This document shows, piece by piece, positions 1 through 55,902 of a stretch of 64,000 bases of DNA (position 1 is the stretch's first letter; the number at the start of each line of letters is the position of its first letter). This stretch comes from Schmidtea polychroa (Eukaryota): NCBI GenBank assembly GCA_044892525.1, contig CM097887.1:128876397-128940396 (forward strand). The letters are read 5' to 3'. The translations under genes and the position numbers were made by a program. Under the pieces are notes generated by a model that searched no databases, had not been told where the DNA came from, and saw only the letters and a list, made by a program, of their open reading frames with translations.

Positions 1-2720
1 AATTATTAACATCTAGGTATGACATTTGTGTTGATTCATCAGCTTCAACATGATGTTTGTTGATAAATGTCATTCCACCACGAATACCAGCTTCAAATAA
101 ACGGTAAAGCTCTGGATCTTGAATAAATTCTACTGGTTCAGGTAACTGTTTAATAGCTGATGCCCAACTTAATCCGGGTATGGAAACAAACGATAGAGCC
201 TCAAGTCCATCTTCGTCAAATGTTTTTTCTCTGAAAGCTTCAAAAACATCGGCCAACAGAAAAACATCCAACTTGAGATATACTAGCATGTAATCTAGCA
301 GTGTCTCACAGTTGTATTGTCGCCAGATTCGATTTGCATGTATATAATCTTCTTGACTAACTCCCTCCCAAATCGGTGGTAATTCTGTTATTGACTGTAA
401 AACATCCATTGATGTAGCCATATCATAAGGAAAAATGGTTTTACAAGTCATCATCTGTGATTCGAAAACATCTGAGGTCAGTGGAAGACGTGGCAAGTTT
501 TTTGATAAATTTGCCAAGCTGCTATTTAAAAATTGTAAAGAATCAATGAATCTAATTCTTCTGCCTTTCGATGTCGCTGTAAGTGTGAGAAACTTTTCTG
601 TTGATTGAGGAATAACAATTAAATTCCAATCTGGGAATTTTCCAATTGCATATTTTAATATATGATGAATGTCATATCCACGAAGATTATGAAATACAAC
701 AGGTAAAGACGGATTGATTCTTCTAGCCAAATTACAATCTTGACACGCTGCTCCGAGATATTGACCAGTAAAATGATCATGATCTCGAACAGGTATATTG
801 ATAATCTTTTTACAAAGGTAGCAATGAGTTTGAGTCGTGAATTCTTCCTGCTGTTCCCAAGAGAGTTCCATCATTTCCTTTGATCCATTAATTTTATACC
901 ACGGATAAACTATGTCTGTAGCTATATCATCCAATGCTTGTATGAACTGAATGATACAGTTTTTCCCAACAAATGTTTCATTTCGAATCGGACAACCTTG
1001 ATGAAGAAGCACAAATTCAGATGCAATCGGCTCATGTTTTTGGAAGTGCTTGTCATCTAGAGGTAATATTGATTCAAAGTCCGCATAGACAACAAACTGC
1101 TGTTTTATAGTTTTACTCCAGTCTTTAAATTCGATATATTTATTCTCTGGCATTGAGTATAGAGTCGTCCGCTCCACATTCTTCCTACAAAGACCTATAT
1201 GTCTTTCAAAAGCAGGACGTTTTTGAAACCCATGAAGACACGTATGACACCAATGTGATTGGATTCTGACTCCTTCTACTCTATCTCTGTAATTGAGCAG
1301 TCGATCGAGATTAGTTACAGCCAAAAAATGATAATTTAATTCTAAAATTTAGTTAATATTTTTAATGATTAAAAGAAATATTACCTTCTTCAATCAATAA
1401 GAGATATATCTGAGATCCCGTCGAAGTACTTCTATATACCAAGTCAACGAACCGATTCTTGAAAATATCATTAGTTTTTTGTTTAATTGGATCTTTATTA
1501 TATTTGAGAACATTGATCGCTAGATTTGGATTCATTGCTTCAAATTGGCAAATGTTAACCAACTTCATCGGAAACCATTCAAATTTCCATTTTAAGTCTT
1601 AAAAACAAAATTCAATGATTTATGACATTTATAAATATATATATTACCACTTAAGTTATATTTTGTTGTTCTTTCTCTATCCCGACGTATGTCATCATAA
1701 CGTAATACGGCCAGTATGCTATATAAAAAGCAGAATTGATCATTATTTTGAACATTAACTAAAGCCTGGCAGTTTTTCAGGTAATTTGGCGTTTTAATGT
1801 AACTTGAACCTAAGTAAATATCTTGATTTATATATATATATAATGTAAATAAACTTACCAGATACATGTATTATGTCTGATAATTTAGTTAAATCATAGT
1901 AACTTCTAGTATTTTATGAATTCTCCACCCACTACTTTGTTGAGTGTATTTCTCCAACTTTTCTTTTAATTTTTCAATTCCATCATTAATAAATGAAGAT
2001 GACATTGTAATTGCTTTATTCGACAAACACCATTTTTTAATTTCACCATCCTCTTTGATAAACTCTGCACAAAGTCCAAATTGGATTTTTACTGTCCCCA
2101 TTCGTTGAATATGATCTTCTATTTCTTTGATGAGACAATCTGGAACAACAATGTCAGGAGAATTAATTGCAGATACATCGCTTATCAATTCAACACGAGA
2201 ACCATTTAAGTCAGACTCCCGACGTGGACACAATTGTATGTTAGAGTCTCCATTTCCGTAAAATATTGACTTTCGTTTTGTGGTGCCAGAGTTTTGTCTA
2301 ACTATATTTATAATTAATATTAAACAACTTAAATAACATAACTTGTAACATATTCTTTAATCTGCTTAGGATCGTATGATGTATTCATTTTCGGTTGTAC
2401 TATAAAAAATTAATAATTGTTAATAGTAGAAAGAGTATTACTTTTAGTGATCATCCTGCTCTTCGTTTCTTCGAATCTTCTAAGATGGTGTCCGTGTTGT
2501 CGTACAAACATTAACCACCTACCTGGTGATATAATGAGACATTCCGGACATATGTAACCCGATAAGGTAGAGTCATTTATCTTGAAATATGATGATGTAA
2601 CTGATTTACAGTTCTCCACATCTTCATGACTTTCGGCAATACAAAATTTATATACACTGCATCCGTTCACTAAAAGAAAATAATCATTAATATTAGATAG
2701 AGAATAAAAAATTATTCACT
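1..2720 (-). CDS. polB: Second pPolB copy (mirror of 6392-9111), running off the left edge of the window
   Basis: Reverse complement of the right-arm gene with the same introns and the same frameshift. One visible non-synonymous difference (2655 vs 6457, V/L). The long exon from 1341 has no stop before the edge, so it is absent from the ORF track. Confidence 0.9.
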
Positions 2721-3456
2721 TATATAAGTTAAATTAAAAGTTTAAATGACAAACATTTGAAAAGTTACTGCTTATATATTACACATGATTAAATTCTGAC
2801 CAATCAAAATCAAGGAAGGGGTAGGAAAAATAAATATATTCTGACCAATCAAAATCAAGGAAGGGGTAGGAAAAATAAATGCATTACGTTACAGTATTTT
2901 AAAAGTTCAATATATTTTAAAACACATTTTGATGCTAAAGTTGACTTATTTAACATTTTCATAATAATTTAATAAAAATAATGTGATGAACCCACAAAGT
3001 AATATCATTTTTCATCAAATTGCAAAACAGTAATAACGTTTTCATAAAATTGTAACAAAATAATAACATATTTCAGATAAATTTTCAACAGTTGTAAAAT
3101 ATTTAAACAAATTGTAACAAGATTAGAAAATATTACAACAAAGTAGTAACATATTTCAGAAAATTTCAACAAAGTTGTAAAATATTTATCAAATTGTAAC
3201 TAAAATAATAAAAATATTGCAACAAAGTAATAAAATAATGATGTTAATTGGGACAAATCAATACATTATTTCGAAGACGGACAACAAATTAAAAAGAATA
3301 TTGTAATAAATTGTGAAGTCTTTCAGTAAATTACAACAAAGTAATAACATATTTCGGAAATATTTCACCAGATGTAAAATATTTAAGCAAAATGTTATAA
3401 GATTATAAAAATATTGCAACAAAGTAATAAAATAATACAACATTTTAAACTCTAGA

Positions 3457-4045
3457 TCAATCCATTTTATAGAAAATTAAATTTTATCTCTATAATATAT
3501 GAATAAATATACAAGGAAATTACGTTAACTGTATGAAAAATACAAATTTATCGTAAAAAACATGTGTGTATTACACACAACATACAAGACATAATTTTTA
3601 ATCAAGCTATTTTATAGAAAATTAAATTTTATCTATATAATATATGAATAAATATTCAAGGAAATTACGTTAACGTATAATAAATACAAATTTATCATAA
3701 AAACATGTGTGTATTACACAAAAAACAAGATACATAATTTCTAATCAATCCATTTTATAGAAAATTAAATTTTATCTATATATTATATGAATAAAATCCT
3801 AAGAAAATTACGTTAACTATATGAAAAATACAAATTTATCTTAAAAACATGTGTGTATTACACACAGAACAAGATACATAATTTCTAATCAATCCATTTT
3901 ATAGAAAATTAAATTTTATCTATATAATATATGAATAAAAATCCAAGAAAATTACGTTAACCGCGCGAAAAATACAAATTTATCGTAAAAACATGTGTGT
4001 ATTACACACAAAGCGACAAACTAAAATTGTAATTGAGCCATTTTG
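3457..4045. repeat. Tandem array of four ~144-bp units (left arm)
   Basis: Reverse complement of right-arm units 1, 5, 6 and 7. Confidence 0.93.
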
Positions 4046-4225
4046 TAGAGAATTAAATTCTGCCTATACATGGTTACACTTAAATCCCAATCGAACAAAG
4101 AGAAAAGAGAGAAAAAGAGAGAAAAAAAAACAGTAGAGTAGGGTATTGTGTGGACCCGGGTGAAACCTTTGCATAGATCTCTTCAAGACCTTACGAATGA
4201 TGTGAATAAAATATAATTAAATTTT

Positions 4226-4418
4226 AAAATACCGCAACGTAATATATTTAATAATTAAAATTTCAAAATACCGCAACGTAATATATTTTTAAAATACCGC
4301 AACGTAATATAAATTTTAAAATACCGCAACGTAATATAAATTTTAAAATACCGCAACGTAATATATTTTTAAAATACCGCAACGTAATATAAATTTAAAA
4401 ATACCGCAACGTAATATA
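4226..4418 (+). repeat. Seven copies of an invariant 21-mer AAAATACCGCAACGTAATATA (iteron-like)
   Basis: Core TACCGC starts at 4230, 4269, 4295, 4322, 4349, 4375 and 4402 (spacing 39, 26, 27, 27, 26, 27). Confidence 0.95.
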
Positions 4419-4449
4419 AATTTAAAAAAAAATTTAAAAAAAAAAAAAA

Positions 4450-4520
4450 TACCCCCCTCCCCCGGGGGTATGACGTCATATGTCTTTGTGACGTCATCGA
4501 TGACGTCATATGTCTTTGTT
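4450..4520. promoter_or_regulatory. GC hairpin plus three CRE/ATF sites (TGACGTCA), including a perfect 20-bp palindrome
   Basis: TACCCCC-N7-GGGGGTA at 4450-4470. TGACGTCA at 4471, 4489 and 4501. TGACGTCATCGATGACGTCA (4489-4508) is self-complementary. Direct repeat TGACGTCATATGTCTTTGT occurs twice. Confidence 0.75.
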
Positions 4521-4635
4521 CCCGGGTCCACGCAATACCCTACTCTACTGTTTTTTCTCTCTCTTTTTCTCTCTTTTCTCTTTGTTCGATTGGGATTTAA
4601 GTGTAACCATGTATAGGCAGAATTTAATTCTCTAC

Positions 4636-5655
4636 AAAATGGCTCAATTACAATTTTAGTTTGTCGCTTTGTGTGTAATACACACATGTTTTTACGATAA
4701 ATTTGTATTTTTCGCGCGGTTAACGTAATTTTCTTGGATTTTTATTCATATATTATATAGATAAAATTTAATTTTCTATAAAATGGCTCAATTACAATTT
4801 TAGTTTGTCGCTTTGTGTGTAATACACACATGTTTTTACGATAAATTTGTATTTTTCATACAGTTAACGTAATTTTCTTAGGATTTTATTCATATAATAT
4901 ATAGATAAAATTTAATTTTCTATAAAATGGATTGATTAGAAATTATGTATCTTGTTCTGTGTGTAATACACACATGTTTTTAAGATAAATTTGTATTTTT
5001 CATATAGTTAACGTAATTTTCTTAGGATTTTATTCATATAATATATAGATAAAATTTAATTTTCTATAAAATGGCTCAATTACAATTTTAGTTTGTCGCT
5101 TTGTGTGTAATACACACATGTTTTTACGATAAATTTGTATTTTTCATACAGTTAACGTAATTTTCTTAGGATTTTATTCATATAATATATAGATAAAATT
5201 TAATTTTCTATAAAATGGATTGATTAGAAATTATGTATCTTGTTCTGTGTGTAATACACACATGTTTTTAAGATAAATTTGTATTTTTCATATAGTTAAC
5301 GTAATTTTCTTAGGATTTTATTCATATAATATATAGATAAAATTTAATTTTCTATAAAATGGATTGATTAGAAATTATGTATCTTGTTTTTTGTGTAATA
5401 CACACATGTTTTTATGATAAATTTGTATTTATTATACGTTAACGTAATTTCCTTGAATATTTATTCATATATTATATAGATAAAATTTAATTTTCTATAA
5501 AATAGCTTGATTAAAAATTATGTCTTGTATGTTGTGTGTAATACACACATGTTTTTTACGATAAATTTGTATTTTTCATACAGTTAACGTAATTTCCTTG
5601 TATATTTATTCATATATTATAGAGATAAAATTTAATTTTCTATAAAATGGATTGA
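4636..5655. repeat. Tandem array of seven ~144-bp units (right arm)
   Basis: Unit starts (AAAATGG/AAAATAG) at 4636, 4780, 4924, 5068, 5212, 5356 and 5499. Units carry a TGTGT(GT)AATACACACA hairpin and a TAACGTAATT motif. Confidence 0.95.
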
Positions 5656-5681
5656 TCTAGAGTTTAAAATGTTGTATTATT

Positions 5682-6075
5682 TTATTACTTTGTTGCAATA
5701 TTTTTATAATCTTATAACATTTTGCTTAAATATTTTACATCTGGTGAAATATTTCCGAAATATGTTATTACTTTGTTGTAATTTACTGAAAGACTTCACA
5801 ATTTATTACAATATTCTTTTTAATTTGTTGTCCGTCTTCGAAATAATGTATTGATTTGTCCCAATTAACATCATTATTTTATTACTTTGTTGCAATATTT
5901 TTATTATTTTAGTTACAATTTGATAAATATTTTACAACTTTGTTGAAATTTTCTGAAATATGTTACTACTTTGTTGTAATATTTTCTAATCTTGTTACAA
6001 TTTGTTTAAATATTTTACAACTGTTGAAAATTTATCTGAAATATGTTATTATTTTGTTACAATTTTATGAAAACG
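5682..6075. repeat. Degenerate 83-84-bp tandem repeat (TTATTACTTTGTTGCAATATTTTT...), mirrored at ~3037-3430
   Basis: Unit starts at 5682, 5765, 5879, 5963 and 6046. Confidence 0.85.
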
Positions 6076-6231
6076 TTATAACTGTTTTGCAATTTGATGA
6101 AAAATGATATTACTTTGTGGGTTCATCACATTATTTTTATTAAATTATTATGAAAATGTTAAATAAGTCAACTTTAGCATCAAAATGTGTTTTAAAATAT
6201 ATTGAACTTTTAAAATACTGTAACGTAATGC

Positions 6232-6340
6232 ATTTATTTTTCCTACCCCTTCCTTGATTTTGATTGGTCAGAATATATTTATTTTTCCTACCCCTTCCTT
6301 GATTTTGATTGGTCAGAATTTAATCATGTGTAATATATAA
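6232..6340 (+). promoter_or_regulatory. Pol II-type promoter of pPolB: two copies of a 43-bp block with a reversed CCAAT box, then a TATA box (mirror copy at ~2772-2880, minus strand)
   Basis: ATTTATTTTTCCTACCCCTTCCTTGATTTTGATTGGTCAGAAT at 6232-6274 and 6277-6319 (ATTGG at 6263 and 6308). TATATAA at 6334-6340, about 50 nt upstream of the predicted split start codon. Confidence 0.6.
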
Positions 6341-6391
6341 GCAGTAACTTTTCAAATGTTTGTCATTTAAACTTTTAATTTAACTTATATA

Positions 6392-9300
6392 AGTGAATAA
6401 TTTTTTATTCTCTATCTAATATTAATGATTATTTTCTTTTAGTGAACGGATGCAGTTTATATAAATTTTGTATTGCCGAAAGTCATGAAGATGTGGAGAA
6501 CTGTAAATCAGTTACATCATCATATTTCAAGATAAATGACTCTACCTTATCGGGTTACATATGTCCGGAATGTCTCATTATATCACCAGGTAGGTGGTTA
6601 ATGTTTGTACGACAACACGGACACCATCTTAGAAGATTCGAAGAAACGAAGAGCAGGATGATCACTAAAAGTAATACTCTTTCTACTATTAACAATTATT
6701 AATTTTTTATAGTACAACCGAAAATGAATACATCATACGATCCTAAGCAGATTAAAGAATATGTTACAAGTTATGTTATTTAAGTTGTTTAATATTAATT
6801 ATAAATATAGTTAGACAAAACTCTGGCACCACAAAACGAAAGTCAATATTTTACGGAAATGGAGACTCTAACATACAATTGTGTCCACGTCGGGAGTCTG
6901 ACTTAAATGGTTCTCGTGTTGAATTGATAAGCGATGTATCTGCAATTAATTCTCCTGACATTGTTGTTCCAGATTGTCTCATCAAAGAAATAGAAGATCA
7001 TATTCAACGAATGGGGACAGTAAAAATCCAATTTGGACTTTGTGCAGAGTTTATCAAAGAGGATGGTGAAATTAAAAAATGGTGTTTGTCGAATAAAGCA
7101 ATTACAATGTCATCTTCATTTATTAATGATGGAATTGAAAAATTAAAAGAAAAGTTGGAGAAATACACTCAACAAAGTAGTGGGTGGAGAATTCATAAAA
7201 TACTAGAAGTTACTATGATTTAACTAAATTATCAGACATAATACATGTATCTGGTAAGTTTATTTACATTATATATATATATAAATCAAGATATTTACTT
7301 AGGTTCAAGTTACATTAAAACGCCAAATTACCTGAAAAACTGCCAGGCTTTAGTTAATGTTCAAAATAATGATCAATTCTGCTTTTTATATAGCATACTG
7401 GCCGTATTACGTTATGATGACATACGTCGGGATAGAGAAAGAACAACAAAATATAACTTAAGTGGTAATATATATATTTATAAATGTCATAAATCATTGA
7501 ATTTTGTTTTTAAGACTTAAAATGGAAATTTGAATGGTTTCCGATGAAGTTGGTTAACATTTGCCAATTTGAAGCAATGAATCCAAATCTAGCGATCAAT
7601 GTTCTCAAATATAATAAAGATCCAATTAAACAAAAAACTAATGATATTTTCAAGAATCGGTTCGTTGACTTGGTATATAGAAGTACTTCGACGGGATCTC
7701 AGATATATCTCTTATTGATTGAAGAAGGTAATATTTCTTTTAATCATTAAAAATATTAACTAAATTTTAGAATTAAATTATCATTTTTTGGCTGTAACTA
7801 ATCTCGATCGACTGCTCAATTACAGAGATAGAGTAGAAGGAGTCAGAATCCAATCACATTGGTGTCATACGTGTCTTCATGGGTTTCAAAAACGTCCTGC
7901 TTTTGAAAGACATATAGGTCTTTGTAGGAAGAATGTGGAGCGGACGACTCTATACTCAATGCCAGAGAATAAATATATCGAATTTAAAGACTGGAGTAAA
8001 ACTATAAAACAGCAGTTTGTTGTCTATGCGGACTTTGAATCAATATTACCTCTAGATGACAAGCACTTCCAAAAACATGAGCCGATTGCATCTGAATTTG
8101 TGCTTCTTCATCAAGGTTGTCCGATTCGAAATGAAACATTTGTTGGGAAAAACTGTATCATTCAGTTCATACAAGCATTGGATGATATAGCTACAGACAT
8201 AGTTTATCCGTGGTATAAAATTAATGGATCAAAGGAAATGATGGAACTCTCTTGGGAACAGCAGGAAGAATTCACGACTCAAACTCATTGCTACCTTTGT
8301 AAAAAGATTATCAATATACCTGTTCGAGATCATGATCATTTTACTGGTCAATATCTCGGAGCAGCGTGTCAAGATTGTAATTTGGCTAGAAGAATCAATC
8401 CGTCTTTACCTGTTGTATTTCATAATCTTCGTGGATATGACATTCATCATATATTAAAATATGCAATTGGAAAATTCCCAGATTGGAATTTAATTGTTAT
8501 TCCTCAATCAACAGAAAAGTTTCTCACACTTACAGCGACATCGAAAGGCAGAAGAATTAGATTCATTGATTCTTTACAATTTTTAAATAGCAGCTTGGCA
8601 AATTTATCAAAAAACTTGCCACGTCTTCCACTGACCTCAGATGTTTTCGAATCACAGATGATGACTTGTAAAACCATTTTTCCTTATGATATGGCTACAT
8701 CAATGGATGTTTTACAGTCAATAACAGAATTACCACCGATTTGGGAGGGAGTTAGTCAAGAAGATTATATACATGCAAATCGAATCTGGCGACAATACAA
8801 CTGTGAGACACTGCTAGATTACATGCTAGTATATCTCAAGTTGGATGTTTTTCTGTTGGCCGATGTTTTTGAAGCTTTCAGAGAAAAAACATTTGACGAA
8901 GATGGACTTGAGGCTCTATCGTTTGTTTCCATACCCGGATTAAGTTGGGCATCAGCTATTAAACAGTTACCTGAACCAGTAGAATTTATTCAAGATCCAG
9001 AGCTTTACCGTTTATTTGAAGCTGGTATTCGTGGTGGAATGACATTTATCAACAAACATCATGTTGAAGCTGATGAATCAACACAAATGTCATACCTAGA
9101 TGTTAATAATTTATATGGATGGGCGCTGTCGCAAAAACTTCCTGTTGGTGAATTTAGATGGCTAAATGATCAGACTGAAATGAATGGTATTGTTGAAAGA
9201 TGTGCAAATGGGGATGAGTTTGATGGAGATCGTGGATATGTTCTAGAGGTTGACATCGTCATTCCTGATAGTATACAAGATAAACTAGATGATTTACCTA

Positions 9301-10382
9301 TAGCTCCTGAGCTTTGTTATCCGCCTGGTAGTAAAGTTGAAAAGCTGTTGTTAACTCATGAGCCTAAGAAAAACTATGTAGTTAATGGTAGAGTTTTGAC
9401 AGAGTGGTTGAGTTACGGCGCAAAAGTCACAAAAGTTAATCGTGCTGTAGAATTCAAGCAAGTGGCTATTTTCAAAGGCTATATTGATTACAATACCAAA
9501 ATGAGAGCAGCTAGTACAGATTCGTTTCAGCGAGATTATTATAAGTTAAAGAACAACAGTTTATACGGTAAAACTGTGGAAAACTTGAAGAAACGTATAA
9601 ATTTGAGATTATGCAGCAAAAACAAAAGATTGATAACTTATTGTAGTAATCCTATGTTTCGTCGTAGCATCAAGATTGCGGATGATCTCATTGCTGTTAT
9701 ACTCAATAAGGAAATTGTGTGTTTAGATAGACCAATGTATATTGGACAAACCGTACTTGATTTATCCAAACTTCGCATGTACCAGTTTCAATATAAAGAA
9801 CTACAGAGTTATAGAGAAGAATTCAATTGTCAAATTAATATCGTAGCCGGTGACACAGATTCCTTCTTTTTAGAGTGTAAAAATGTAGATTTACGCTTAC
9901 AACTATATCCAAAAATGATTGCCGATGGGCTCCTAGATACTTCAAATTATCCAGTGACTGATCCATTGTTCTCAGATAAAATTTGTTCGGTAATCGGGAA
10001 ATTCAAGGATGAGAATAAAGGAAATCAATATAAAGAATGGGTGTTTCTTCGACCCAAGTGCTACTCACTCCAAGGCGATAAAAACACTCTAAAAGCCAAA
10101 GGAATAAGACTTACAAACTCTAATCTTACACATGAAGCCTATAAAAAAGTGTATACTGATGGTGGAACAGTGAGCATCCCACAAAAAAGAATAGGAAGTG
10201 TCAATCATCAGTTGTATACTTTCATGACAGAAAAACGAGCTCTCCAATGTTTGGACGATAAAAGGTATTGGTACAATTGTAATGAAAGCTATGCCTACGG
10301 TCACTATAAGATTCGTCAAATGCATATCGCAACTGCTCCGTCTACAAATGAATGCAATCGAAACAAGCACTTTAACAATTAA
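6392..10382 (+). CDS. polB: Protein-primed family B DNA polymerase (Polinton/Maverick-type pPolB), spliced gene of ~1,240 codons with one frameshift; last exon 7771-10382 intact
   Basis: 864-aa ORF motifs: Exo I VYADFES, HNLRGYD, FIDSLQFL, Exo III YLKLDVFLLADVFE, GIRGG, Pol A YLDVNNLYG, Pol B KLKNNSLYGK, Pol C GDTDS, FLRPKCY, KAKG. It also has an endonuclease VII-like insert (CYLC..VRDHDHFTGQYLGAACQDCN). Upstream ORF pieces carry N-terminal motifs typical of this family (SGW..IL, GSSYIKTP..NVQNNDQFCF, FP....QFE..NP..INV, YHFLAVTNLDRL) and join in frame via GT-AG introns 6393-6442, 6671-6712, 6770-6810, 7254-7302, 7465-7514 and 7728-7770. Confidence 0.9.
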
Positions 10383-11049
10383 ATTTATGTGAATAATAAA
10401 ATATATATTGTGAATTATTTGACTTAGTTAATTAAAATGTGTTTTATCATTTAATTATTTATTTGTCCAATTAATTTAGATAATTAGTTTAAGTAAGAAT
10501 TATTATTTATCATGAAAAACTTTGCTTTGTTTTGAAAAATTAATGCCCATTTTATTTTAAATTAACACAGCTTTACTTTATGATTATTACTAATTAAAAT
10601 TTTATTCAAATTGAAATATTATTGTTATAATTTACCTCTTGTTAGAATATAATGTAAATGTAAAATTAAAAAAAAAAAAATAATAATAATAATAATAATA
10701 AATAAATAAATAAAATAATACTAAAATAAAAACATAATAAAATAATNNNNNNNNNNNNNNNNNNNNNNNNNNNNNNNNNNNNNNNNNNNNNNNNNNNNNN
10801 NNNNNNNNNNNNNNNNNNNNNNNNNNNNNNNNNNNNNNNNNNNNNNNNNNNNNNNNNNNNNNNNNNNNNNNNNNNNNNNNNNNNNNNNNNNNNNNNNNNN
10901 NTTAAAATAAAATATTAATAAATTAATAAATTAATTAAATGTAATAAATTAAAATAAAACATAATAAAATAATTAATTAATAAAAAAAAAAAAAAAAATT
11001 AAAAAGAAGTAATTAAATAAAATGTTACTTTAAAAAATAAATGATTCAA

Positions 11050-11430
11050 TTGGTCTATATTCGATCTTGATATTCCATGACCTTGAAAGTGCGCTGGAGT
11101 CCTTACTATTCACTACTAATATTACACTTGTAAATGTTCTCCTACTAGGTATTAAAAATCTGGATTTAATTTTTCAATAAAAATTTTAAAATTAGCTGAA
11201 TCCATAAACGATAACGGAAGTCCATCTTATAAAATCTGACTATTTAATAGAAATTCAGCAGAAAAATTAATGTCAGCACTTTTGTTCATATCTTCACCAT
11301 GCTCATTTGCCATATGGTAAAGCATACCATTTGTTTGACCATTCATGGAAATAGTATGTTCGCAAAGCTTGCATTTGGTCATATTATTACCAATTTCATC
11401 AAAAAAAAACCCACACTAAACTTCTTTTTT
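11050..11430 (-). pseudogene. hAT transposase N-terminal remnant with BED zinc finger
   Basis: Manual translation: VW.FFDEIGNNMTKCKLCEHTISMNGQTNGMLYHMANEH (W, Cx2C, Hx4H), followed by DGLPLSF; interrupted by stops. Confidence 0.65.
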
Positions 11431-13819
11431 TTCTCTTTTTAGACCCAACTAAAATTTGAAATGAATCTTGCATAGAAACTGGTATATGAGTTATTGATGA
11501 ATCTAAAATAATATCTGTAGTGGTATTTTGAGGTAACAACTAGGAATTATTAGGAAAAAATGCGGTTTTTTCGGGTTGATTTATTGATGTGTCTTTCAAG
11601 AGTCAACACACATCGAGTCAAACACATTGCGAGGTGAATACGGCGTTGATGATGTAGGTATTGTAAACGGTAGTGGTTCTTTGTTAATACCATTTGTAAC
11701 TTTTTACGCGGTTTATCTTTAATTGTAAGGGAATAAATATTTTATTATTAATAAGAAATTATTAATAAAAAATTATTAAATAAATTATTAAATCCCTAGT
11801 TTTTATATTATTATTATTATTTATTTATTGATACTTAACTCTTTCGTGGTTTTTGCTAAAAATTTAAATTTAATTTAAAATAAAATTTATTTGTTTTAAA
11901 ATCAAAAATAATTTTCAAAATATGGGGGCTAAATATTAAAATTAATTTTAATATAATAATTATAAATTAAATTTTTTTAAAATATCCGAATAATATTGTT
12001 AAATAAATTGCTAATTTTAAAACTTTTAATTATTTTCCCCCCAAATTTGTGTATTTTTTAAAATATTTTTCTAATTTTTCCTCCAAATTTGTGTGTAAAC
12101 CCATTTTTAAAATTGAAATAAATATTAATAACTAATAGATAATAATTATTATACTTATAGAATGTTATTCATATAAACTCGTATTATGAGTAATATTTTA
12201 TCATCGAAATTATTATTTTTATTAATANNNNNNNNNNNNNNNNNNNNNNNNNNNNNNNNNNNNNNNNNNNNNNNNNNNNNNNNNNNNNNNNNNNNNNNNN
12301 NNNNNNNNNNNNNNNNNNNNNNNNNNNNNNNNNNNNNNNNNNNNNNNNNNNNNNNNNNNNNNNNNNNNNNNNNNNNNNNNNNNNNNNNNNNNNNNNNNNN
12401 NNNNNNNNNNNNNNNNNNNNNNNNNNNNNNNNNNNNNTATTATTAATATTTAAAATTTCCTACGAACCAATTTAGGAGAAATTTGAGTTGAATGGCAGGA
12501 AGTTTCTAATTTCCGTCTAGAGACTAATTGGAACAAAATTATCTAACGTCTCTAAATGATATAAGTTTAACTATACTGACATAAACTCCTATTTAACTTC
12601 AACAAATAATGATCAAATAAACAAAATAAATATTCATATAAATCCCTTGGTGTTAATATTAAAAAGTTCATTTCATTTTCNNNNNNNNNNNNNNNNNNNN
12701 NNNNNNNNNNNNNNNNNNNNNNNNNNNNNNNNNNNNNNNNNNNNNNNNNNNNNNNNNNNNNNNNNNNNNNNNNNNNNNNNNNNNNNNNNNNNNNNNNNNN
12801 NNNNNNNNNNNNNNNNNNNNNTGAACTTTATAATGACTTTATAAATATTGAAATTTTATTTTAGTTTTCAAACGTTTTCCCTAAGAAATATAATGATGAA
12901 CAAATAATTTGTCATGACTTTTGAATAAGATGTTTTATTTACTTTATAATTCGCAATATTTATTTTTCTGTGTATACGATGAAAAATATATTTGAAAAAT
13001 ATTATTTATTTTTAAATAATAATAATTAAATATTACTAAAATTTTAATAAATGAAAAAATGAAAAAAAAATATAAATAAAGTTTTTATCACATAATAGTT
13101 TTGAAATATTACATATTCTTTACCAATTTACTTTAGAAAAATAGTTGGAATAATTCACAGTTACCTCTGTTCCTTTTTATTATATTAGCTGCCTTTTGAA
13201 AAGATCGGTTCAAATTTCTATTCGTCTGAAATAAATTTACATATTTTCAAAATGAAAAATGCTGGAATTAAATAATTGCCGATTTAATAATAATATTTTA
13301 TTATCACTTTATAGCTGACTCCGTGTATTCAAAACTATTCGTACGAAGACTGTATATAATATACTAATTTATTATTGATATCACAATTTTACAAGATCTG
13401 ATTTTATTAAATTGATAGACCACAAATAGGGCCTATAAGAGCCACATTGAGACCCATTTCAGGTAATATATGTGGCCCCCTATATAGTAATATGAGTTTT
13501 AGAAATTTTAAGTTTTTGTTGATCAATAATTCATTAATACAAAATAAAAAAAAATCCGATTCAAAATATCAAAAAACAAAAACTAAATGTAATAAATAAA
13601 AATGAAAAAAGCCTTTTAGAGTCCTTAGAGGTTTAACTTAAACGAACTTATTTATTCAGAATAATCGAAATCGAAATCAAGTCGAAAGTAAAAATACCCC
13701 AAAGATAGGTGACTCTCAAAGTTGTATTCGATTTTATTATAGGAAATATTTTTTTTGCCCTACATAAAAGTGTAAAATAATATTTTAATCGCTTTGTATA
13801 GTTCTGATCTTATTACTAG

Positions 13820-27551: not shown

Positions 27552-30238
27552 CAGGGTTGCCAGATTTTGAAAACATCATGTCGGGAGTAACGAAAAAAAA
27601 TATTTCGACTGGTCTTTTTTTAGTTTATTTTTTTATACAGAAATTAAAAAGATACATAATTCAAATGCTGTTGAACAAAAAAAATTAAATCAATAAAATA
27701 AAACAAACAAATAAAAAATAAAAAAATTAACAAAAAAAAAACAAAAATAACAAAAATAAATAAAAAAATAAAATAAAATAACAAACATAAAAATAAAACT
27801 AAAAATAAATAAATTAGTGATAATACCAAAATATTTTATAATATTTTTCAGATCTGGCAGCGTTTTTTATAATTAGTTGAGCATTTTCTGTTTGGAGAAA
27901 TTCAATAAATTCTTTACAGGACATTTTAAAATTTTCTTTTACCATTAATTCTGCTTCAAGGTTTTGCAACAACAATTTATTTCGTTCCTTGCGCCAAGCG
28001 GTTGTCATCAAGCTGAATATCCTTTCGGAAGTTGCATTGGTATGAGGAATAGAAAAAATTATGCATACTATTTTATATAAATTTGCTGAGTTTTCATGAA
28101 CTTTAAAGAATTTTACTCATTTTTCATCAGGTAATAATGTGTTCAGTTTTTCTCTTTCTGTATTTATAAAATAATTTAATTTATGAATTTCTTCGAATAA
28201 AATATCTTTATCAATATTGCAAATATTAAATTTTTCAATGATTGCTACTATTTTATTATATTGAATTGATTCTTTTAAACTTAGTGGTTTTAAGATTTCG
28301 AATTTATTATTTTCGAAATTAAACCATTTTTGCAAATAAGTTATTGCCACATTAAAAAATGAATTTGCTTCTATTTCAAATCTTTTTATGGCAGAATCAT
28401 TATCACATTTTTGTAATATTGTTCTTGCGATTGAGCCGTAAAATTGTTGCTCTTTTCTGTTGATTAACGATTGTCTGACTTCATCCATTATATCATATAT
28501 ATCTATTATAAGAACGTTGTTGGTTTGTAACTTTTTTAAAGCGGGCTGAAATATTGAAAATGTGTTCATAATAAATCCTAGATAAGCTATAGAAAGCTCA
28601 TCTTCAAAAAATAATCGTATTCCAACAGATATTGAATTTTGAAACAAAAAATATGATTTAATTGGTTCAAAATCTTTCAATAACCTTTCACCAGCAGGTA
28701 AAAGGCTTAGCCATCGACTTGGAACGTGGCGTAAGATTTCCGACCATTCTACTTCGGCCCATTCAAAAAAATCTTTTAATGTAGGGGTTTTTTTGTTGAC
28801 GAGCTAAACTCGTTATAAATTTTTATGACTATTGAATCAATATCAATTTTCAGTTAGGTTGTGGCTTTTTTCGCAGTGTTGTGCAGAATATGACTATTAC
28901 ATCCAATCGGAATAATTTTAGAATTAGCTTTTTTAAATTCCGTAAAAACACTCTGGTTCTTCCGAAATTCACAGCTGCATTATCCGCACAAAGAGATGAT
29001 AAATTTTAAATATTTAAACTTTTGCATTCCAATTTATTCTTTATATAATCTGCTGTCAACTGAACGTTCACTATCTAGTGAATAAAAAGACAGCAGAACA
29101 TTTTGTATACCTTTTTCTTTGGTAAAATATCGCAAGACTATAGGAAATGTTTTAACATTTCCTTTATTCGAAGCATCGGTACTCACAGAAAATGGAATAT
29201 CACCTTTCAACTGTTCTAAAATTCTTCTTTTCGATTCCGGGGTCAAAACATTACAAACAATTTTGGATATTTTGGTTCTTCCACAGCTGTACTTTCTTGC
29301 TATATTTGAATCAGAAAGCAAACCTGAAAATATTGAACCAGCACAATCACTAGATAAAAAGCTGTGTGAATGCATGATGGTATGATAGCAAAAAGCCACT
29401 TCTGCTGATGTACCAAGTCCTTCGTCTTTGCTGCTTTTTTTACAAAATAACGTAGTCAATTTTTTTGAATTTGCTGATGCAGCTATCTTGGATCGATGAC
29501 CAACCGTTTTAAAGTGTCTTTTAATATCATTTCCACCACCATGTGATATAGAAATTTTAAAATTATTACACACTGTACAAGTAATGTGATGATCACCACA
29601 TTGTCGAATCCAGTCATATGACTTCGTCCATTTCGGATTAAATTTTACTGTATACTTCACTTTTTTTTATATATCCTCTGTTTTCGTCAGAATCAATGCA
29701 TTCCAAATTCGAATCAGACATTTTTAGGCTATAATTAGTACGTCTTATTAAAAAACGAAAACCATTACAAATTTCAATATTAATATATTGAGTTTTTATA
29801 GCTTATACTTACTTTATTCTTTATATATTATATTTATATGTGTTAAATATTACGTAGACGCACCGAGATTTATTTTAATTTTATTCAATATAAATTATAT
29901 TTAGCTTCCTATCCTAATTGTATGATTGTATCACTTAATTTATTTAATATTTTGTTCCAAACGACCATTTTAATTAATTGAGATTCTTAGAATACACAAA
30001 TAAACAATAAGTAAATTTAGACATCAGAACAATACTTATAGGCAAAACACAATGCGCAAAATGTCAAAAAAATTCACTATTTTCACCCAATTGGCATTAC
30101 TTCAAAATGTTAAGTGATGACAACTGCTGAAAAAACTTAATTTACAAATCGGGAGTTTTTGGCATGTATATCGGCAGTCGGGAAATATACTTTCATAACG
30201 GGAGACTCCCGACGAAATCGGGAGGTCTGGCAACCCTG
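27552..30238 (-). mobile_element. hAT DNA transposon, 2,687 bp, with TIRs and 8-bp TSD
   Basis: TIRs CAGGGTTGCCAGA (27552-27564) and TCTGGCAACCCTG (30226-30238). TSD ATTCCAAT at 27544-27551 and 30239-30246. Confidence 0.95.
27814..29660 (-). pseudogene. Disrupted hAT transposase
   Basis: Zn finger (CTVC..SHGG..DIKRH..T.GH), first catalytic Asp in FSVSTDASNKG, RWLSLLP motif just before 28680, and SIPHTNATSERIFS near 28040. Split into ORFs 29034..29660, 28117..28680 and 27814..28011. Confidence 0.9.
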
Positions 30239-34205: not shown

Positions 34206-36737
34206 ATAATCAAAATCGTGAAATTTCATTTTTAGTGCACCATTTTTGAATTTACACATCTTTTCAAACAACTATACATCTTTCTCATTCATTCATATTC
34301 CTGTATTGAAATATTTACAAACCAACATGTTTTAGTTACAAAAAGAGTTATCAATAAATTGAGTAAGGGTAGGAAATTATTTAGAATCAATGAATAACAC
34401 ACATACCTTAGTATAATAGATGTTAATACATATTACAATAAACCCACTCACATGCGTATACATAAAACACGCACATATTAACATTATTTCATACGCACGC
34501 ACAAATTAATATTATTCAATACAGAAAATTCATAGAGGTTAAGCACATATCAACCAATCAAAATCATGCATTGATTTTGCATTGTTTTGCATATGAGTAA
34601 TATCAAAAAAATTAAATTCATTATATCATTAAATAATAAATTCTTTTACAGTATTTTAAACTATATTCAATCAAATTATAAAAATATTGCAACACAGTTG
34701 AGAAATGAACAAACTTAAATAATAATATATTTATTAATAATGTTGGGTTATTGAGTTGGTGACAATATTTGTAAATTCAAACTTTTACTATGGCTCCAAA
34801 GCGTGTTTATTAATTCACAATTCAACACTCTCGAACACAATTAAGCTTTATTTATGATCCACACGGAATAGTGCAAACTTCAATTACAACCAATTAACTA
34901 TAAACCAATTTATCACACAGAGCTTATTTCGTCACTACGTGAAGAATAACTCTTTCTGTAACCACAACAAAAATCCCTAGGCGTCAACTACTCAATCGAT
35001 TGTTCTAATTGCTTTGACCACACAATTTATTTACTCCACTTTTACTTTATATTCAATTTTATAAAGGATTTTTGTCGCTTCTCATTTTTACTCTGTTTTG
35101 ATTCTCCTTTTCAACTCTTTCGTCTCTAATTTTACTCTACTTTTTGTCTCTAATATCGTTTTGTTTTGTTCTCAATTTCGTTCTGTTTTCGTTCTACTTT
35201 TCGTTCTAATTTTGTTCTAAATCCGTTCTAAATTTGTTTTAAATTTGTTCTAATTTTGTTCTGATTTCTCGTCCACCAGTTTTCCTTTATATAGTTGTTT
35301 TGTTTATGGCACTGACGGCAGATTTTGTTTTTCTATTTCCATTTTCTTCTGCGTTCCCCTATATCAGCCTTATCTCTGACAGATGTCGAGATATTTTTCC
35401 TTTTTCCCTTTTTTGTTTGACCGCCTTCTTCCAGCAATTACGTTATCACTGGCAGGCTGTCGAGATAATAATATTGTTGTTTTCCTTTTCTCCTTATTTC
35501 AAAATTCCTTTTCCTTTTTGTACTAATTAATTAGTACTGACCTTGGCTTTTATTTTCATGTTTGTTTCCTTTTATTTCCTTTATTTTTCTCATTTTTAAT
35601 TTCTTTTTATTTCCGTTTTCTTTTCTACGTTCCCACAGATCGTCCCGTTTGTCATGACGATCTTCCCCCCAGGTAATTTTATTTATTTATTTATAAATTG
35701 TTTATTTAGGTATCCTCAACAATAAGATATATTATTTTCAATAATAATTTATTTTTAAGTTCATAAAACCGAGAGAAATTTTATTTTATTTAATAATATT
35801 TACTGTGACAAACAGAAATTGGAATTGATATAAAGATTTAATACACTGATATAACTTTTCATATACCTCAAATAAAAACACTATAATAAAAATATTAATA
35901 GTTTTGCAAACAGTGCTAACACATATAGTTAACTAGTCATTGGTACGTTATTACTTTGTTGCAATATTTTTATAATTTGTTACAATTTGATTAAATATTT
36001 TACAACTTTGTTGAAAATTTACCGAAATATGTTACTACATTGTTGCAATATTTTTATAATCTTGTTACAACTTGCTTAAATATTTTATAACTTTGTTGAA
36101 ATTTTCCGAAATATGTTATTACTTTGTTGTAATTTAATGAAAAGTTTCATAATTTTGTGGTAATTTAGTGTAAAATATTTATTCAATTATTGCCATTCAC
36201 CGAAATAATTTTATTAATTTTATAACCATTAACTGAAATAATTTATTATTTTGCAATAATTAATGATTGAATATAGTTTAAAATACTGTAAAAGAATTCA
36301 TTATTTAATGATATAATGAATTTAATTTTTTTGATATTACTCATATGCAATAACAATGCAAAATCAATGCATGATTTTGATTGGTTGATATGTGCTTAAC
36401 CTCTATGAATTTTCTGTATTGAATAATATTAATTTGTGCGTGCGTATGAAATAATGTTAATATGTGCGTGTTTTAATATATGTATACGCATGTGAGTGGG
36501 TTTATTGTAATATGTATTAACATATATTACACTAAGGTATGTGTGTTGCTTATTGATTCTAAATAATTTCCTACCCTTACTCGATTTATTGATAACTATT
36601 TTTGTAACTAAAACATGTTGGTTTGTAAATATTTCAATACAGGAATATGAATGAATGGGAAAGATGTATAGTTGTTTAAAAAGATGTGTAAATTCAAAAA
36701 TGGTGCACTAAAAATGAAATTTCACGGTTTTAATTAT
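34206..36737. mobile_element. Foldback element with ~470-bp inverted arms, related to the non-coding core of the pPolB palindrome
   Basis: 34206-34673 is the imperfect reverse complement of ~36265-36737. It shares GATTTTGATTGGT, TTTCCTACCC, TTAAAATACTGTAA and the 84-bp repeat (35948, 36032, 36116) with 5682-6319. Confidence 0.85.
34741..35670 (-). mobile_element. Probable LTR with adjacent polypurine tract, inside the foldback spacer
   Basis: Minus strand: GGGGGGAAGA (35670-35661), then T(C)GTCATGAC, TATATAAAGG (~35293), an 11-12-bp minisatellite (35160-35265), AATAAA (~34810), ending CCCAACA at 34741. No TSD found. Confidence 0.4.
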
Positions 36738-40379: not shown

Positions 40380-40990
40380 ACTTTCAAGGGAGTTACTACT
40401 GGAAACCGTATTTAGAGAACTCGAAAAAGCAGACATCATACGACGTCCCTCAACATTTTCGGTTTGAGCGATATATGTCTATTCTAAAAGCAATGGTTCC
40501 CTAAAACCGTGCGGTTACTATAGATTCCTGAACTCAAATACTTATTGTTATCTCAAGCCACTGATTATTGACATCCTAAAACATATACATGAAAAAACTG
40601 TTTTTTCAAAAATAAATTTAAAAAAGCGTATCACCAGATTCATATCGCCACCCAGATATCCCTAAGACCACCGTAATAACACTTTTCGGTTTATTTGAAT
40701 ATGTGGTGATACCCTTCGGTTTACGAAACGCAGCGCAATCTGTCAAGCGTCATATCGACCATGTTTTCCACGACATTGATTTTTCGAGACCTTACCTTGA
40801 CGACATATTAATACTTTCCTGTTGGAAAAAAGAGTTCATGTTGGAAAATTACTTTCAGTGTTAAACCAAAAAAAACATGATTAACAAGAAGTGTGTTTTT
40901 TTCGATAGTGAAGTACAATGCTTAGGCCATCTCATTTCCAAAGAAGGAAATAAATCAAATACTTTAAAAGAAGTTGTAAATGCCTTATAT
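40380..40990 (+). pseudogene. Ty3/gypsy reverse transcriptase remnant
   Basis: GLFEYVVIPFGLRNAAQS..RHID and PYLDDIL motifs; many frameshifts. Confidence 0.8.
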
Positions 40991-45754: not shown

Positions 45755-47577
45755 CCTTTAACCGGAGAGAAGAGTCTTTTGGACTCTTTCTTTTAACCAT
45801 ACGTAAACCAAAATTAAAATACTAATTCAAATTTAAATTTTTTGCACATTTTTTTAACGAATCATGAATTTTCAACAATATTCGAATTTTTTCAAAGTTT
45901 CTAAAATAACGTATTTTCAAAAAATAAAAAAATATACCAAAACAGACAGATGCTTAAATTTCACAAGAAAAATTTAAAAATTTAAAAAGGGGATTTAATT
46001 TTAAATTTAATTATGAAGATTTTTGGGATTCTCTTTTTGGAAGCCCTATATTTCGCGCTACTATGGGTATAAGGCGTTTCTAGTCAATTTTAAGATTTTA
46101 CCGATTTGATGACAAGGAGAATCGGTCAGTGCGCAGATCCAATGATAAATTGGCTCCAATTGGGGATGTTTGGGAAATCATAAATAAAAATTTCTCAAAA
46201 CATTATATTCCAGGCCAAACTTAACCATTGATGAGCAGTTGGTTCCTTTTCGTGGACGAATAAGTTTCAAGCAATACATACCCAGTAAACCAGATAAATA
46301 TGGAATAAAAATTTGGTGGATTGTTGAAAATGAAACGGCTTATACTTCGAAAGGAATTCCATATTTGGGCAAAGAGGGTAACACGAGAGCATTAAATTTA
46401 GCCCAAAATGTTGTTGAAGAACTATGCATACCGTTTCATCGTTCAAATCAAAACATAACATTCGATAACTATTTCACAAACTATGAACTAGACAACTCTT
46501 TGTTGTCTAAACGCTTAACTACTGTTAGAACACTTCGCAAAAATAAGACATTTATACCTCAATCATTTTTGCCACATCCATCTAGAGAAGTTAAAAGCAC
46601 AAGTTTCGGATTTAGTAACACAATGCCAATAATTTCGTACGTACAACAAAAAATCAGGTACTTCTTATTGTTATCTACGAAACATCACACAATGAATGTT
46701 GATACTGAAAATAAAAGAAAGCCTGATCAAATTTTGTTTTATAACGCTACAAAAGGAGGAGTAGATACAATGGACAAACTATGTAATGCTTTTACTGTCA
46801 GACGAAAAACTAATGGGTGGCCTTCTGAATTTTTTCAGAATTTAATTGATGTTAGCGGCGTAGCTGCGCTTGTAATTTGAAGAAATTTTTACAATGAGAA
46901 AATATGTGATTCTCAAAGAAAAGCGTTTATTAGGGAAATCACATACGATTTAGTAAGGACTCAGATCCTGAAAAAGGTATTAGTGCTGCTCATTTGTCAG
47001 TTATAAATGAAGAATTACAAAACACTAACGAAGAAAACTACGGAGAAACGACGTCGACTTTGGAAGATCAACGAAAGAAGAAACGTTATTACATATGACC
47101 TAATGCAATTGACAATGGGAATCATTTGACTAATTATCCTCCTAACGTTAAAAACAAATATCGACGATGAAATAATTATTTTTCTCTTAATTGTTTCTAA
47201 TTAAACTGATCCAAGCAGTATTGCGTCACTTGTAACAGGAATGTATGCAATGAACATTCACAAAATACAGTTCTTTGCCAAAATTGCTTAAAAAAATAAT
47301 AATTTGTGTTGTATGTATTGTTTGTATTTGATAAGTTCATGTTCTTGTTTTTTATGAATTAATGTTTGGTTTTGTTTCATATGTTTTATTTTTTTTTATT
47401 TCCATGAAATATGTATGGCTTGAATTATTTTTGTTTAAAAAAAAAGATTTGGACAATAAATAATTTTATAATTATAATTTTAAGGGATTTCTTATGTATT
47501 CATTAAATATTTAGCTTAAGAGTCCTTCGGATTCTTCTATCCGTTTATGTTACAAAAACATTATGTCCAGTTAAAGG
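45755..47577 (+). mobile_element. piggyBac transposon with TTAA TSD
   Basis: TTAA (45751-45754)|CCTTTAAC ... GTTAAAGG|TTAA (47578-47581). Subterminal inverted GAAGAGTC..GGACTC / GAGTCC..ATTCTTC. Confidence 0.9.
46020..47290 (+). pseudogene. piggyBac transposase (PGBD4-like), disrupted
   Basis: TIDEQLVPFRGR, PSKPDKYGIK, ITFDNYFT, YNATKGGVDTMD, and a C-terminal Cys-rich YCVTCNRNVCNEH..CQNC; stops flank ORF 46239..46880. Confidence 0.92.
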
Positions 47578-55644: not shown

Positions 55645-55902
55645 TTAAATCTAACACGTTATTTCCAAAAATATATTTAATATAAAATCCGAATATCTAA
55701 ACAAAATAACAGTCTAAATATCGTCACTATTTCAATTAATTAAAGATTGGTTTAAGAGGTACTTGAGTGAATGGAATTTATTATTATTTTTAAAAATCTC
55801 AATACAGCCATCTCATATCGGTTACTACATAGTAAATGATCATTCTAGACGTATAAAGTATATATATATATATATATTTCTAGGTAAACTATTTGGAACG
55901 AA

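What the first reader, a model, noticed from the sequence alone, without database searches (positions are those of the whole stretch)
1..10382. Head-to-head palindromic element with two outward-facing protein-primed DNA polymerase genes
Seen: two near-identical arms of at least 4.1 kb point pPolB genes away from a unique 360-bp centre. Established: Polintons/Mavericks carry one pPolB between terminal inverted repeats, not two copies inside a giant inverted repeat. Inference: this may be an integrated replicative dimer or fold-back product of a linear element, or a family whose native form is a palindrome with a central origin. The arms differ (substitutions at 2655/6457, 3032/6080, 4149/4532; A9 vs T6; 4 vs 7 array units), which argues against a simple read artefact.
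Basis: partly seen in the sequence, partly recalled or inferred. Interest (0 to 1): 0.9.

Follow-up and report, generated by a model that had tools for sequence, protein, structure and literature searches.

The report
Inverted pair of virus-type polymerase genes
Two almost identical, back-to-back copies of a virus-type (protein-primed) DNA polymerase gene lie in an AT-rich animal genome. They are most likely a very young fold-back duplication of a lone endogenous gene, and an assembly error is not excluded.

Summary
Window 1-4160 and 4521-9111 are inverted copies around an asymmetric 360-bp centre (4161-4520). [quoted passage not shown]

They differ by 4 substitutions, one single-base indel and one three-unit (432 bp) change in a 144-bp tandem array. 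That is the kind of difference seen between alleles or repeat variants, so it does not argue against an artefact.

The gene (6451-10382, mirrored at 2661-<1) has the fold of the polymerases of Polintons, adintoviruses and bidnaviruses. It carries an inserted endonuclease VII/HNH domain and keeps 72 of 72 family-invariant residues. Its N-terminal third is split by three frame changes, the same in both arms. These could be introns or frameshifts.

No integrase, capsid, ATPase or protease gene follows the right-hand copy, so this is not a complete Polinton. The host is an animal, judged from piggyBac, hAT-like and LTR-retroelement fragments nearby.

My best reading (about 0.5) is a genuine, very recent fold-back duplication of a solo pPolB cassette. 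Rivals are an assembly or library chimera (about 0.27), two independent insertions (about 0.1) and a natively palindromic replicon (about 0.07).

The parts
1..4160 (.). Left arm of the inverted repeat, cut by the window's left edge
   Evidence: It mirrors 4521-9111 with 4 substitutions, one 1-nt indel and one 432-bp array difference.
1..2661 (-). Left pPolB gene copy. Only its 5' part (about two thirds) lies in the window. It has the same three frame changes in the N-terminal third as the right copy.
   Evidence: tblastn of full-length relatives. There are no differences from the right copy in the shared part of the long frame.
3451..4059 (.). 144-bp tandem array, 4.2 units (left arm)
4161..4520 (.). 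Unique, non-palindromic centre (360 bp, 27% GC)
   Evidence: It is bounded on both sides by CCCGGG, the innermost bases of the arms.
4213..4428 (+). 27-bp tandem array inside the centre (about 7 units). One related unit lies in each arm (6193-6229 and 2883-2919, 86%).
4471..4508 (.). Cluster of three TGACGTCA (CRE/ATF-type) octamers, the only three in the 64-kb window
   Evidence: 0.44 expected by chance in the whole window
4521..9111 (.). Right arm, as far as a partner exists inside the window. The repeat may continue outward.
4621..5656 (.). 144-bp tandem array, 7.2 units (right arm)
   Evidence: It has three units more than the left array.
5875..6118 (.). 22/30/31/83-bp tandem arrays upstream of the gene (mirror at 2996-3237). 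A related 84-bp array lies at 35947-36133.
6232..6341 (+). Putative promoter: two exact 45-bp repeats, each with a reversed CCAAT box (6232-6319), and a TATA-like TATATAAG (6334-6341), about 110-220 bp before the gene
   Evidence: Read from the sequence; the function is inferred.
6451..10382 (+). Right pPolB gene, whole. The N-terminal third has three frame changes (introns or frameshifts, undecided) and the rest is one open frame of 864 codons. All family-invariant residues are kept.
8277..8387 (+). Endonuclease VII / HNH (His-Me finger) domain inserted before the exonuclease domain
   Evidence: 20.9 bits, below Pfam's cut-off of 23.6. Five of the seven relatives scanned pass it (24.4-27 bits) and two do not.
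8412..9593 (+). PF03175 DNA_pol_B_2 match (exonuclease and polymerase core)
   Evidence: A modelled relative has the phi29-polymerase fold.
10383..10746 (+). 3' flank: AATAAA within 20 nt of the stop, 13% GC, ending at an N run (10747-10901, not filled)

Best explanation
The locus is a genuine, very young palindromic duplication of a lone endogenous polymerase gene cassette in an animal genome.

Each arm holds about 1.9 kb of tandem-repeat-rich upstream DNA, a TATA/CCAAT-type promoter, a 3.9-kb gene and a poly(A) signal. The gene encodes a Polinton/adintovirus-type protein-primed DNA polymerase. It has an N-terminal region of the kind that serves as terminal protein in related polymerases, an inserted endonuclease VII/HNH domain, and an exonuclease-polymerase core.

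The cassette is not a complete virus-like element, because no integrase, capsid, packaging ATPase or protease gene accompanies it on the visible side.

I infer that the palindrome arose by a fold-back copy event. A DNA end or stalled 3' end annealed back on its own strand at a short self-complementary site (CCCGGG sits at both inner arm tips) and was extended. One arm was thereby copied in reverse, and the 360 bp between the two annealing sites was left as an asymmetric loop, now the centre.

Whether this happened in the chromosome or on incoming linear DNA at the time of integration cannot be told.

Shown: the geometry, the near-identity of the arms, the class and intactness of the polymerase part, and the absence of other element genes on the right. 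Inferred: the fold-back mechanism, the promoter function, and that the locus is real.
For: - Arms of 4160 and 4591 nt differ by 4 substitutions, one 1-nt indel and a three-unit array change.
- The centre is sharp-edged and asymmetric, with CCCGGG at both edges.
- The centre shares its 27-bp unit with a site in each arm, so it looks like the natural continuation of one arm, as a fold-back loop would be.
- The contiguous sequence 1-10746 has no N.
- The gene is of the Polinton/adintovirus/bidnavirus type: PF03175; the phi29 polymerase fold; best viral structural matches are bidnavirus-like and adintovirus PolB over up to 1139 alignment columns.
- 72 of 72 invariant and 72 of 77 near-invariant family columns are kept.
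- No long ORF and no Polinton-type Pfam hit lies in the 18 kb to the right.
- A 97%-identical fragment sits on a separate short contig, which suggests that the family has other copies.
- The host looks like an animal, from TE fragments whose named relatives all come from animals.
Against: - No read-level evidence was available.
- The left arm is cut by the window edge, so the outer limit of the repeat is unknown. It therefore cannot be said whether the duplicated unit is the element or a larger piece of host DNA.
- The few differences between the arms are exactly what two alleles or two reads of one locus would show.
- The window has 12 N runs, so the assembly is imperfect nearby.
- CCCGGG at both edges follows automatically from its being the tip of an inverted repeat, so it is only weak support for microhomology.
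Confidence: 0.5

Rival explanations
1. Assembly or library artefact. Only one copy exists, and an inverted chimeric molecule or read (as made by whole-genome amplification, missed hairpin adapters or graph mis-traversal), or a second haplotype, was laid down as a mirror image next to it.
For: - Outside one tandem array the arms are 99.9% identical.
- The differences are one array-length change, one homopolymer-type indel and 4 substitutions, typical of allelic or read-level variation.
- The left arm ends at the window edge.
- The region is repeat-rich and the window has 12 N runs.
- It is established (my own knowledge) that inverted chimeras with a short unique loop are the commonest amplification artefact.
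Against: - The centre is an asymmetric 360-bp stretch with its own repeat structure, and there is no N between the arms.
- A three-unit array difference is not expected from reading one molecule twice.
- Substitutions outnumber indels.
Confidence: 0.27
2. Two separate insertions of the same young element, 360 bp apart and in opposite orientation. The centre is host DNA, perhaps a preferred target.
For: - Both arms end inward at exactly the same base, as the defined termini of a mobile element would.
- A 97%-identical copy elsewhere suggests a multi-copy family.
Against: - The centre's 27-bp unit is related to a sequence inside each arm, so the centre does not look like unrelated host DNA.
- No copy of the inner tip is found in inverted orientation beyond the gene's 3' end on the right, although an N run could hide it.
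- Near-zero divergence would require two almost simultaneous insertions.
Confidence: 0.1
3. The palindrome is the element's own form: an integrated head-to-head replicative dimer, or a family whose native genome is a palindrome with a central control or origin region. The endonuclease VII-like domain might cut such branched or hairpin junctions.
For: - Protein-primed linear replicons are known to yield hairpin and palindromic derivatives. A kalilo plasmid deletion derivative is cited as reference 52 in PMC11161782. Incomplete adenovirus genomes are another example (my own knowledge).
- The family conserves an endonuclease VII-type domain, and T4 endonuclease VII cuts branched DNA (PMC5714182).
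- The centre carries an unusual cluster of three TGACGTCA sites.
- Both polymerase genes are intact in their catalytic part.
Against: - No relative could be examined at the DNA level.
- The papers read describe HNH inserts in Polinton polymerases as homing-endonuclease-like insertions (PMC11161782, PMC10748475), and none found describes a palindromic genome.
- A true dimer junction would be expected to be palindromic, not a 360-bp asymmetric stretch.
- The locus sits among ordinary transposon debris.
Confidence: 0.07

Closest known systems
Polinton/Maverick polymerases with an HNH insert (the 'pPolB2' class of nematodes and oomycetes, PMC10748475; homing-endonuclease inserts in Polinton pPolBs, PMC11161782)
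   Same: It is a protein-primed family B polymerase of about 1200 aa with a long N-terminal region and an HNH-type nuclease domain ahead of the exonuclease domain. It is endogenous in a eukaryotic genome.
   Different: Here no integrase, capsid, ATPase or protease gene lies beside it, and two copies sit in a giant inverted repeat. Whether this protein falls in the pPolB2 clade was not tested, because no named pPolB2 sequence came back from any search.
Adintovirus and bidnavirus-like polymerases
   Same: These are the best structural matches of a modelled close relative (E 5e-65 to 7e-50, up to 1139 aligned columns), so the N-terminal domains superpose as well.
   Different: Sequence identity is only 16-23%. 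No parvovirus-type or double-jelly-roll capsid gene is seen here, and the locus is chromosomal.
Palindromic segmental duplications with a spacer (sex-chromosome palindromes, my own knowledge; mouse chr12 locus, PMC13688818)
   Same: Inverted arms of more than 99.9% identity flank a unique spacer. Such identity can be kept up by arm-to-arm gene conversion.
   Different: Those palindromes are tens of kb to Mb long and carry host genes. This one is at least 9 kb and carries a virus-derived gene.
Hairpin or palindromic derivatives of linear protein-primed replicons (kalilo deletion derivative, reference 52 of PMC11161782; incomplete adenovirus genomes, my own knowledge)
   Same: One end of a pPolB-encoding linear DNA is duplicated in inverted orientation.
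   Different: Those are free molecules with origins at the outer ends. Here the DNA is embedded in a chromosome-like context and no terminus was identified.
Mu killer-type inverted duplications of transposon genes (my own knowledge)
   Same: A transposon gene fragment is duplicated naturally in inverted orientation.
   Different: Mu killer is read through to give a hairpin RNA. Here each copy has its own outward-facing promoter, so a hairpin transcript is not the expected product.

Membership tests
[quoted passage not shown] | Pfam DNA_pol_B_2 match above the curated cut-off | tested here: met
   104.5 bits against a cut-off of 25.8
[quoted passage not shown] | Conserved exonuclease and polymerase catalytic residues | tested here: met
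   72 of 72 invariant columns of 64 relatives are kept. The motifs are visible in the translation.
[quoted passage not shown] | phi29-polymerase-like fold | tested here: met
   the model of relative P0001 (61% identical; pLDDT 87.5) matches phi29 polymerase at E 1e-18, TM 0.71. The TPR1/TPR2 subdomains were not examined separately.
[quoted passage not shown] | Priming from a terminal protein | not testable with these tools
   This is a biochemical property. The N-terminal region is structured, but it was not matched to a named terminal protein or vOTU domain.
Complete Polinton/Maverick | Retroviral-type (RVE) integrase next to pPolB | tested here: not met
   no such ORF or Pfam hit within 18 kb to the right. 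The left side is outside the window.
Complete Polinton/Maverick | Capsid module (major and minor capsid proteins, packaging ATPase, maturation protease) | tested here: not met
   no ORF over 100 codons in 10.4-28 kb. Only a zf-BED fragment was recognised. Sensitivity is limited for short or decayed pieces.
Complete Polinton/Maverick | Terminal inverted repeats with a target-site duplication | tested here: inconclusive
   no inverted copy of the inner tip lies beyond the gene on the right. An N run (10747-10901) and the window edge hide possible ends.
Endonuclease VII / HNH (PF02945) | Pfam match above the cut-off | tested here: inconclusive
   The window protein scores 20.9 bits against a cut-off of 23.6. 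Five of the seven relatives scanned score 24.4-27 bits, and PHROGs calls the domain endonuclease VII in one.
Palindromic segmental duplication | Inverted arms of high identity around a unique spacer | tested here: met
Palindromic segmental duplication | Physical reality: single molecules spanning both arms, twofold depth | not testable with these tools
Replicative dimer or fold-back form of a linear protein-primed replicon | Replicon termini at the outer ends, and the same form in relatives or as free molecules | not tested
   The outer ends are not visible. DNA of relatives was deliberately not fetched (see referred steps).

The most novel reading that the evidence does not exclude
This widespread polymerase family belongs to small linear elements that pass through, or exist as, head-to-head palindromes with a central control region. 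The conserved endonuclease VII-like domain would process the branched or hairpin junction. The window would then hold an integrated example.
Probability: 0.07. Interest if true: 0.85.

Novelty: new member of a known kind. Interest (0 to 1): 0.35.

Why it matters
If the palindrome is real, it is a clean and very young example of an endogenous virus-type polymerase gene copied by fold-back. It leaves two apparently intact, separately promoted copies.

That bears on three questions:
- how such genes persist and multiply without the rest of their element;
- whether hosts keep or use them;
- what the conserved nuclease insert does.

If it is an artefact, it is a useful warning. Mirror-image duplications of repeat-rich mobile-element DNA in assemblies can look like exotic biology, and a handful of arm differences confined to tandem arrays is no proof of reality.

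Tried and rejected
- **Organellar origin or linear mitochondrial plasmid.** Rejected: no tRNA, rRNA or Rfam hit in 64 kb, and nuclear-type transposon fragments surround the locus.
- **Complete Polinton.** Rejected for the visible side.
- **'Relatives are single-gene 4-5 kb units'.** I considered this because full-length relatives sit on contigs only slightly longer than the gene. I rejected it as evidence, because short contigs dominate metagenomes, so contigs just long enough to hold a 3.6-kb ORF are expected anyway. Several relatives sit on 10-32 kb contigs.
- **'Shared breaks prove that the duplication came after gene decay'.** Set aside, because the three interruptions may be introns.
- **Sequence searches of PDB.** The protein and the family profile found nothing useful.
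- **Cluster look-ups.** They gave no organism names.
- **Host identification.** It got no further than 'animal'. Hydra-like GC content and the Endonuclease_7 enrichment reported for Hydra viridissima (PMC7642931) are a lead only, and no Hydra-named hit appeared.
- **Not built.** The N runs were not filled.
Full report
**The observation.** Window 1-4071 is the reverse complement of 9111-5041 at 99.6% identity, with 16 mismatches and no gaps. With one gap allowed, the inverted repeat continues inward to 4160 and 4521. It encloses a 360-bp stretch (4161-4520) that is not self-complementary. The left arm is cut by the window edge, so the outer limit of the repeat is unknown. Each arm holds a 144-bp tandem array, with 4.2 units on the left and 7.2 on the right, plus smaller arrays.

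**How different are the arms?** 14 of the 16 ungapped mismatches lie in the 144-bp array, and they vanish once the right arm is allowed three extra units (432 bp). What remains is 4 substitutions, one single-base indel in a homopolymer-like tract, and the three-unit array difference. The 1324 nt of the long reading frame present in both arms are identical. The arms are thus about 99.9% alike. Their differences are of the kind seen between alleles, between repeat variants or between reads.

**The gene.**
- The right arm carries an open frame of 864 codons ending at 10382. It matches PF03175 (protein-primed, 'organellar and viral' family B polymerase; E 9e-30). It also matches the endonuclease VII/HNH family, weakly.
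- Its relatives are mostly 1150-1300 aa long and 45-62% identical. The window's frame covers only their C-terminal part.
- tblastn with full-length relatives places the whole gene at about 6451-10382 (+), mirrored at 2661 to beyond the edge (-).
- The N-terminal third is collinear with the relatives but is spread over further blocks. There are three frame changes and no stop inside the matching blocks. Each junction has some tens of surplus nucleotides. The pattern is identical in both arms.
- The DNA between blocks is more AT-rich than the blocks (GC 0.25 against 0.32).
- Many relatives of 790-960 aa begin at or near the start of the long frame.
- Together these points make short introns at least as likely as frameshifts. 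No tool here predicts introns and the relatives' DNA was not seen, so I built no joined model and leave the question open.
- The catalytic part is intact. All 72 columns invariant in 64 relatives and 72 of 77 near-invariant ones are kept. An 864-codon open frame in 36% GC DNA is itself very improbable without selection or extreme youth.

**Class of polymerase.**
- AlphaFold2 gave a confident model of the close relative P0001, using an alignment of 64 natural relatives (pLDDT 87.5, pTM 0.80).
- Its best solved-structure match is phi29 DNA polymerase (E 1e-18, TM 0.71).
- Its best viral matches are polymerases labelled densovirus or bidensovirus (bidnavirus-like; E 5e-65, 1139 alignment columns), then adintovirus PolB, 'MELD virus' and adenovirus polymerases.
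- The published analysis of these enzymes describes an N-terminal terminal-protein domain, a vOTU-like domain, and homing-endonuclease insertions at various positions (PMC11161782). An HNH insert marks the 'pPolB2' Polinton polymerases of nematodes and oomycetes (PMC10748475).
- I did not test the terminal-protein and vOTU assignments separately.
- The family is very large: 16,662 cluster representatives at E<=1e-3 and 2,536 at E<=1e-30.

**Surroundings.**
- The window is 11-36% GC (2-kb windows) and has no tRNA, rRNA or Rfam match.
- It holds a piggyBac-type transposase fragment whose named relatives are all from animals, hAT-like ORFs, and reverse-transcriptase fragments.
- Right of the gene come a poly(A) signal, 13% GC DNA, an N run and a zf-BED fragment on the other strand. 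There is no integrase, capsid, ATPase or protease ORF within 18 kb.
- Upstream of each gene lie two exact 45-bp repeats with reversed CCAAT boxes and a TATA-like element.
- The centre holds a 27-bp array, one related unit of which occurs in each arm. It also holds the only three TGACGTCA octamers of the window, all within 38 bp.
- A 97%-identical fragment of the protein is encoded on a separate 1.9-kb contig, which suggests further copies.

**Interpretation.** The cassette is a solitary endogenous gene of a Polinton/adintovirus-type element, not a complete element. Four readings remain:
- **Fold-back duplication (about 0.5).** The near-identity of the arms, the sharp asymmetric centre edged by the self-complementary CCCGGG, and the centre's kinship with arm sequence fit a fold-back copy event. 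A 3' end anneals back on its own strand, is extended, and leaves the intervening 360 bp as a loop. It could have happened in the chromosome or on incoming linear DNA at integration.
- **Assembly or library chimera (about 0.27).** The same features, apart from the array difference and the structured centre, are also what an inverted chimeric read or a misplaced haplotype would give.
- **Two independent insertions (about 0.1).** Less likely, because the centre is related to the arms and no matching outer terminus was found.
- **Natively palindromic or dimeric replicon (about 0.07).** In this reading the endonuclease VII-like domain would process the junction. It is the most novel reading not excluded, but nothing here supports it directly.

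**Limits.**
- The host is an animal and the element is virus-like. I left out all such fetches (search for related loci and collection scans), and the step is referred.
Break positions are not listed. The N runs were left as they are.

Noticed in passing
window 46188-46877 (+): Fragment of a piggyBac-type transposase (PF13843, E 7e-36). All named relatives are from animals: sea slugs, beetles, thrips, a butterfly and a rotifer.
   Followed up: partly
window 28117-29666 (-): Two adjacent ORFs (187 and 208-210 aa) that look like pieces of a hAT/zinc-finger transposase-like protein. They have no Pfam hit.
   Followed up: partly
window 40622-40861 (+) and 47574-47903 (-): Retroelement-like fragments. 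The first has a weak RVT_1 match, below the Pfam cut-off. The second has no Pfam hit and was judged LTR-retroelement-like by eye only.
   Followed up: partly
window 11230-11415 (-): BED zinc-finger fragment (PF02892, E 2e-6) about 850 bp beyond the polymerase stop. It marks unrelated DNA close to the right arm.
   Followed up: partly
window 35947-36133: An 84-bp tandem array, 85-89% similar to the 83-bp array upstream of each polymerase gene. Part of the 'arm' repeats may therefore belong to a dispersed repeat family of the host.
   Followed up: partly
window 4471-4508: Three TGACGTCA palindromic octamers within 38 bp, the only ones in the window (0.44 expected). They could be a regulatory or origin-like cluster.
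   Followed up: partly
window, 12 N runs of 130-487 nt (nearest: 10747-10901, 12228-12437, 12681-12821): N runs of variable length, mostly in very AT-rich, low-complexity DNA.
   Followed up: no
window 55888-56796 (+): A 303-codon open frame (ATG ORF of 298 aa) with one hydrophobic segment and serine-rich tails. It has no family match and may be a host gene.
   Followed up: partly
protein P0107: A 36%-identical relative is annotated in NCBI as an endonuclease-domain protein of a Pseudomonadota MAG, on a 17-kb contig. This is probably a mis-binned eukaryotic or viral contig.
   Followed up: no
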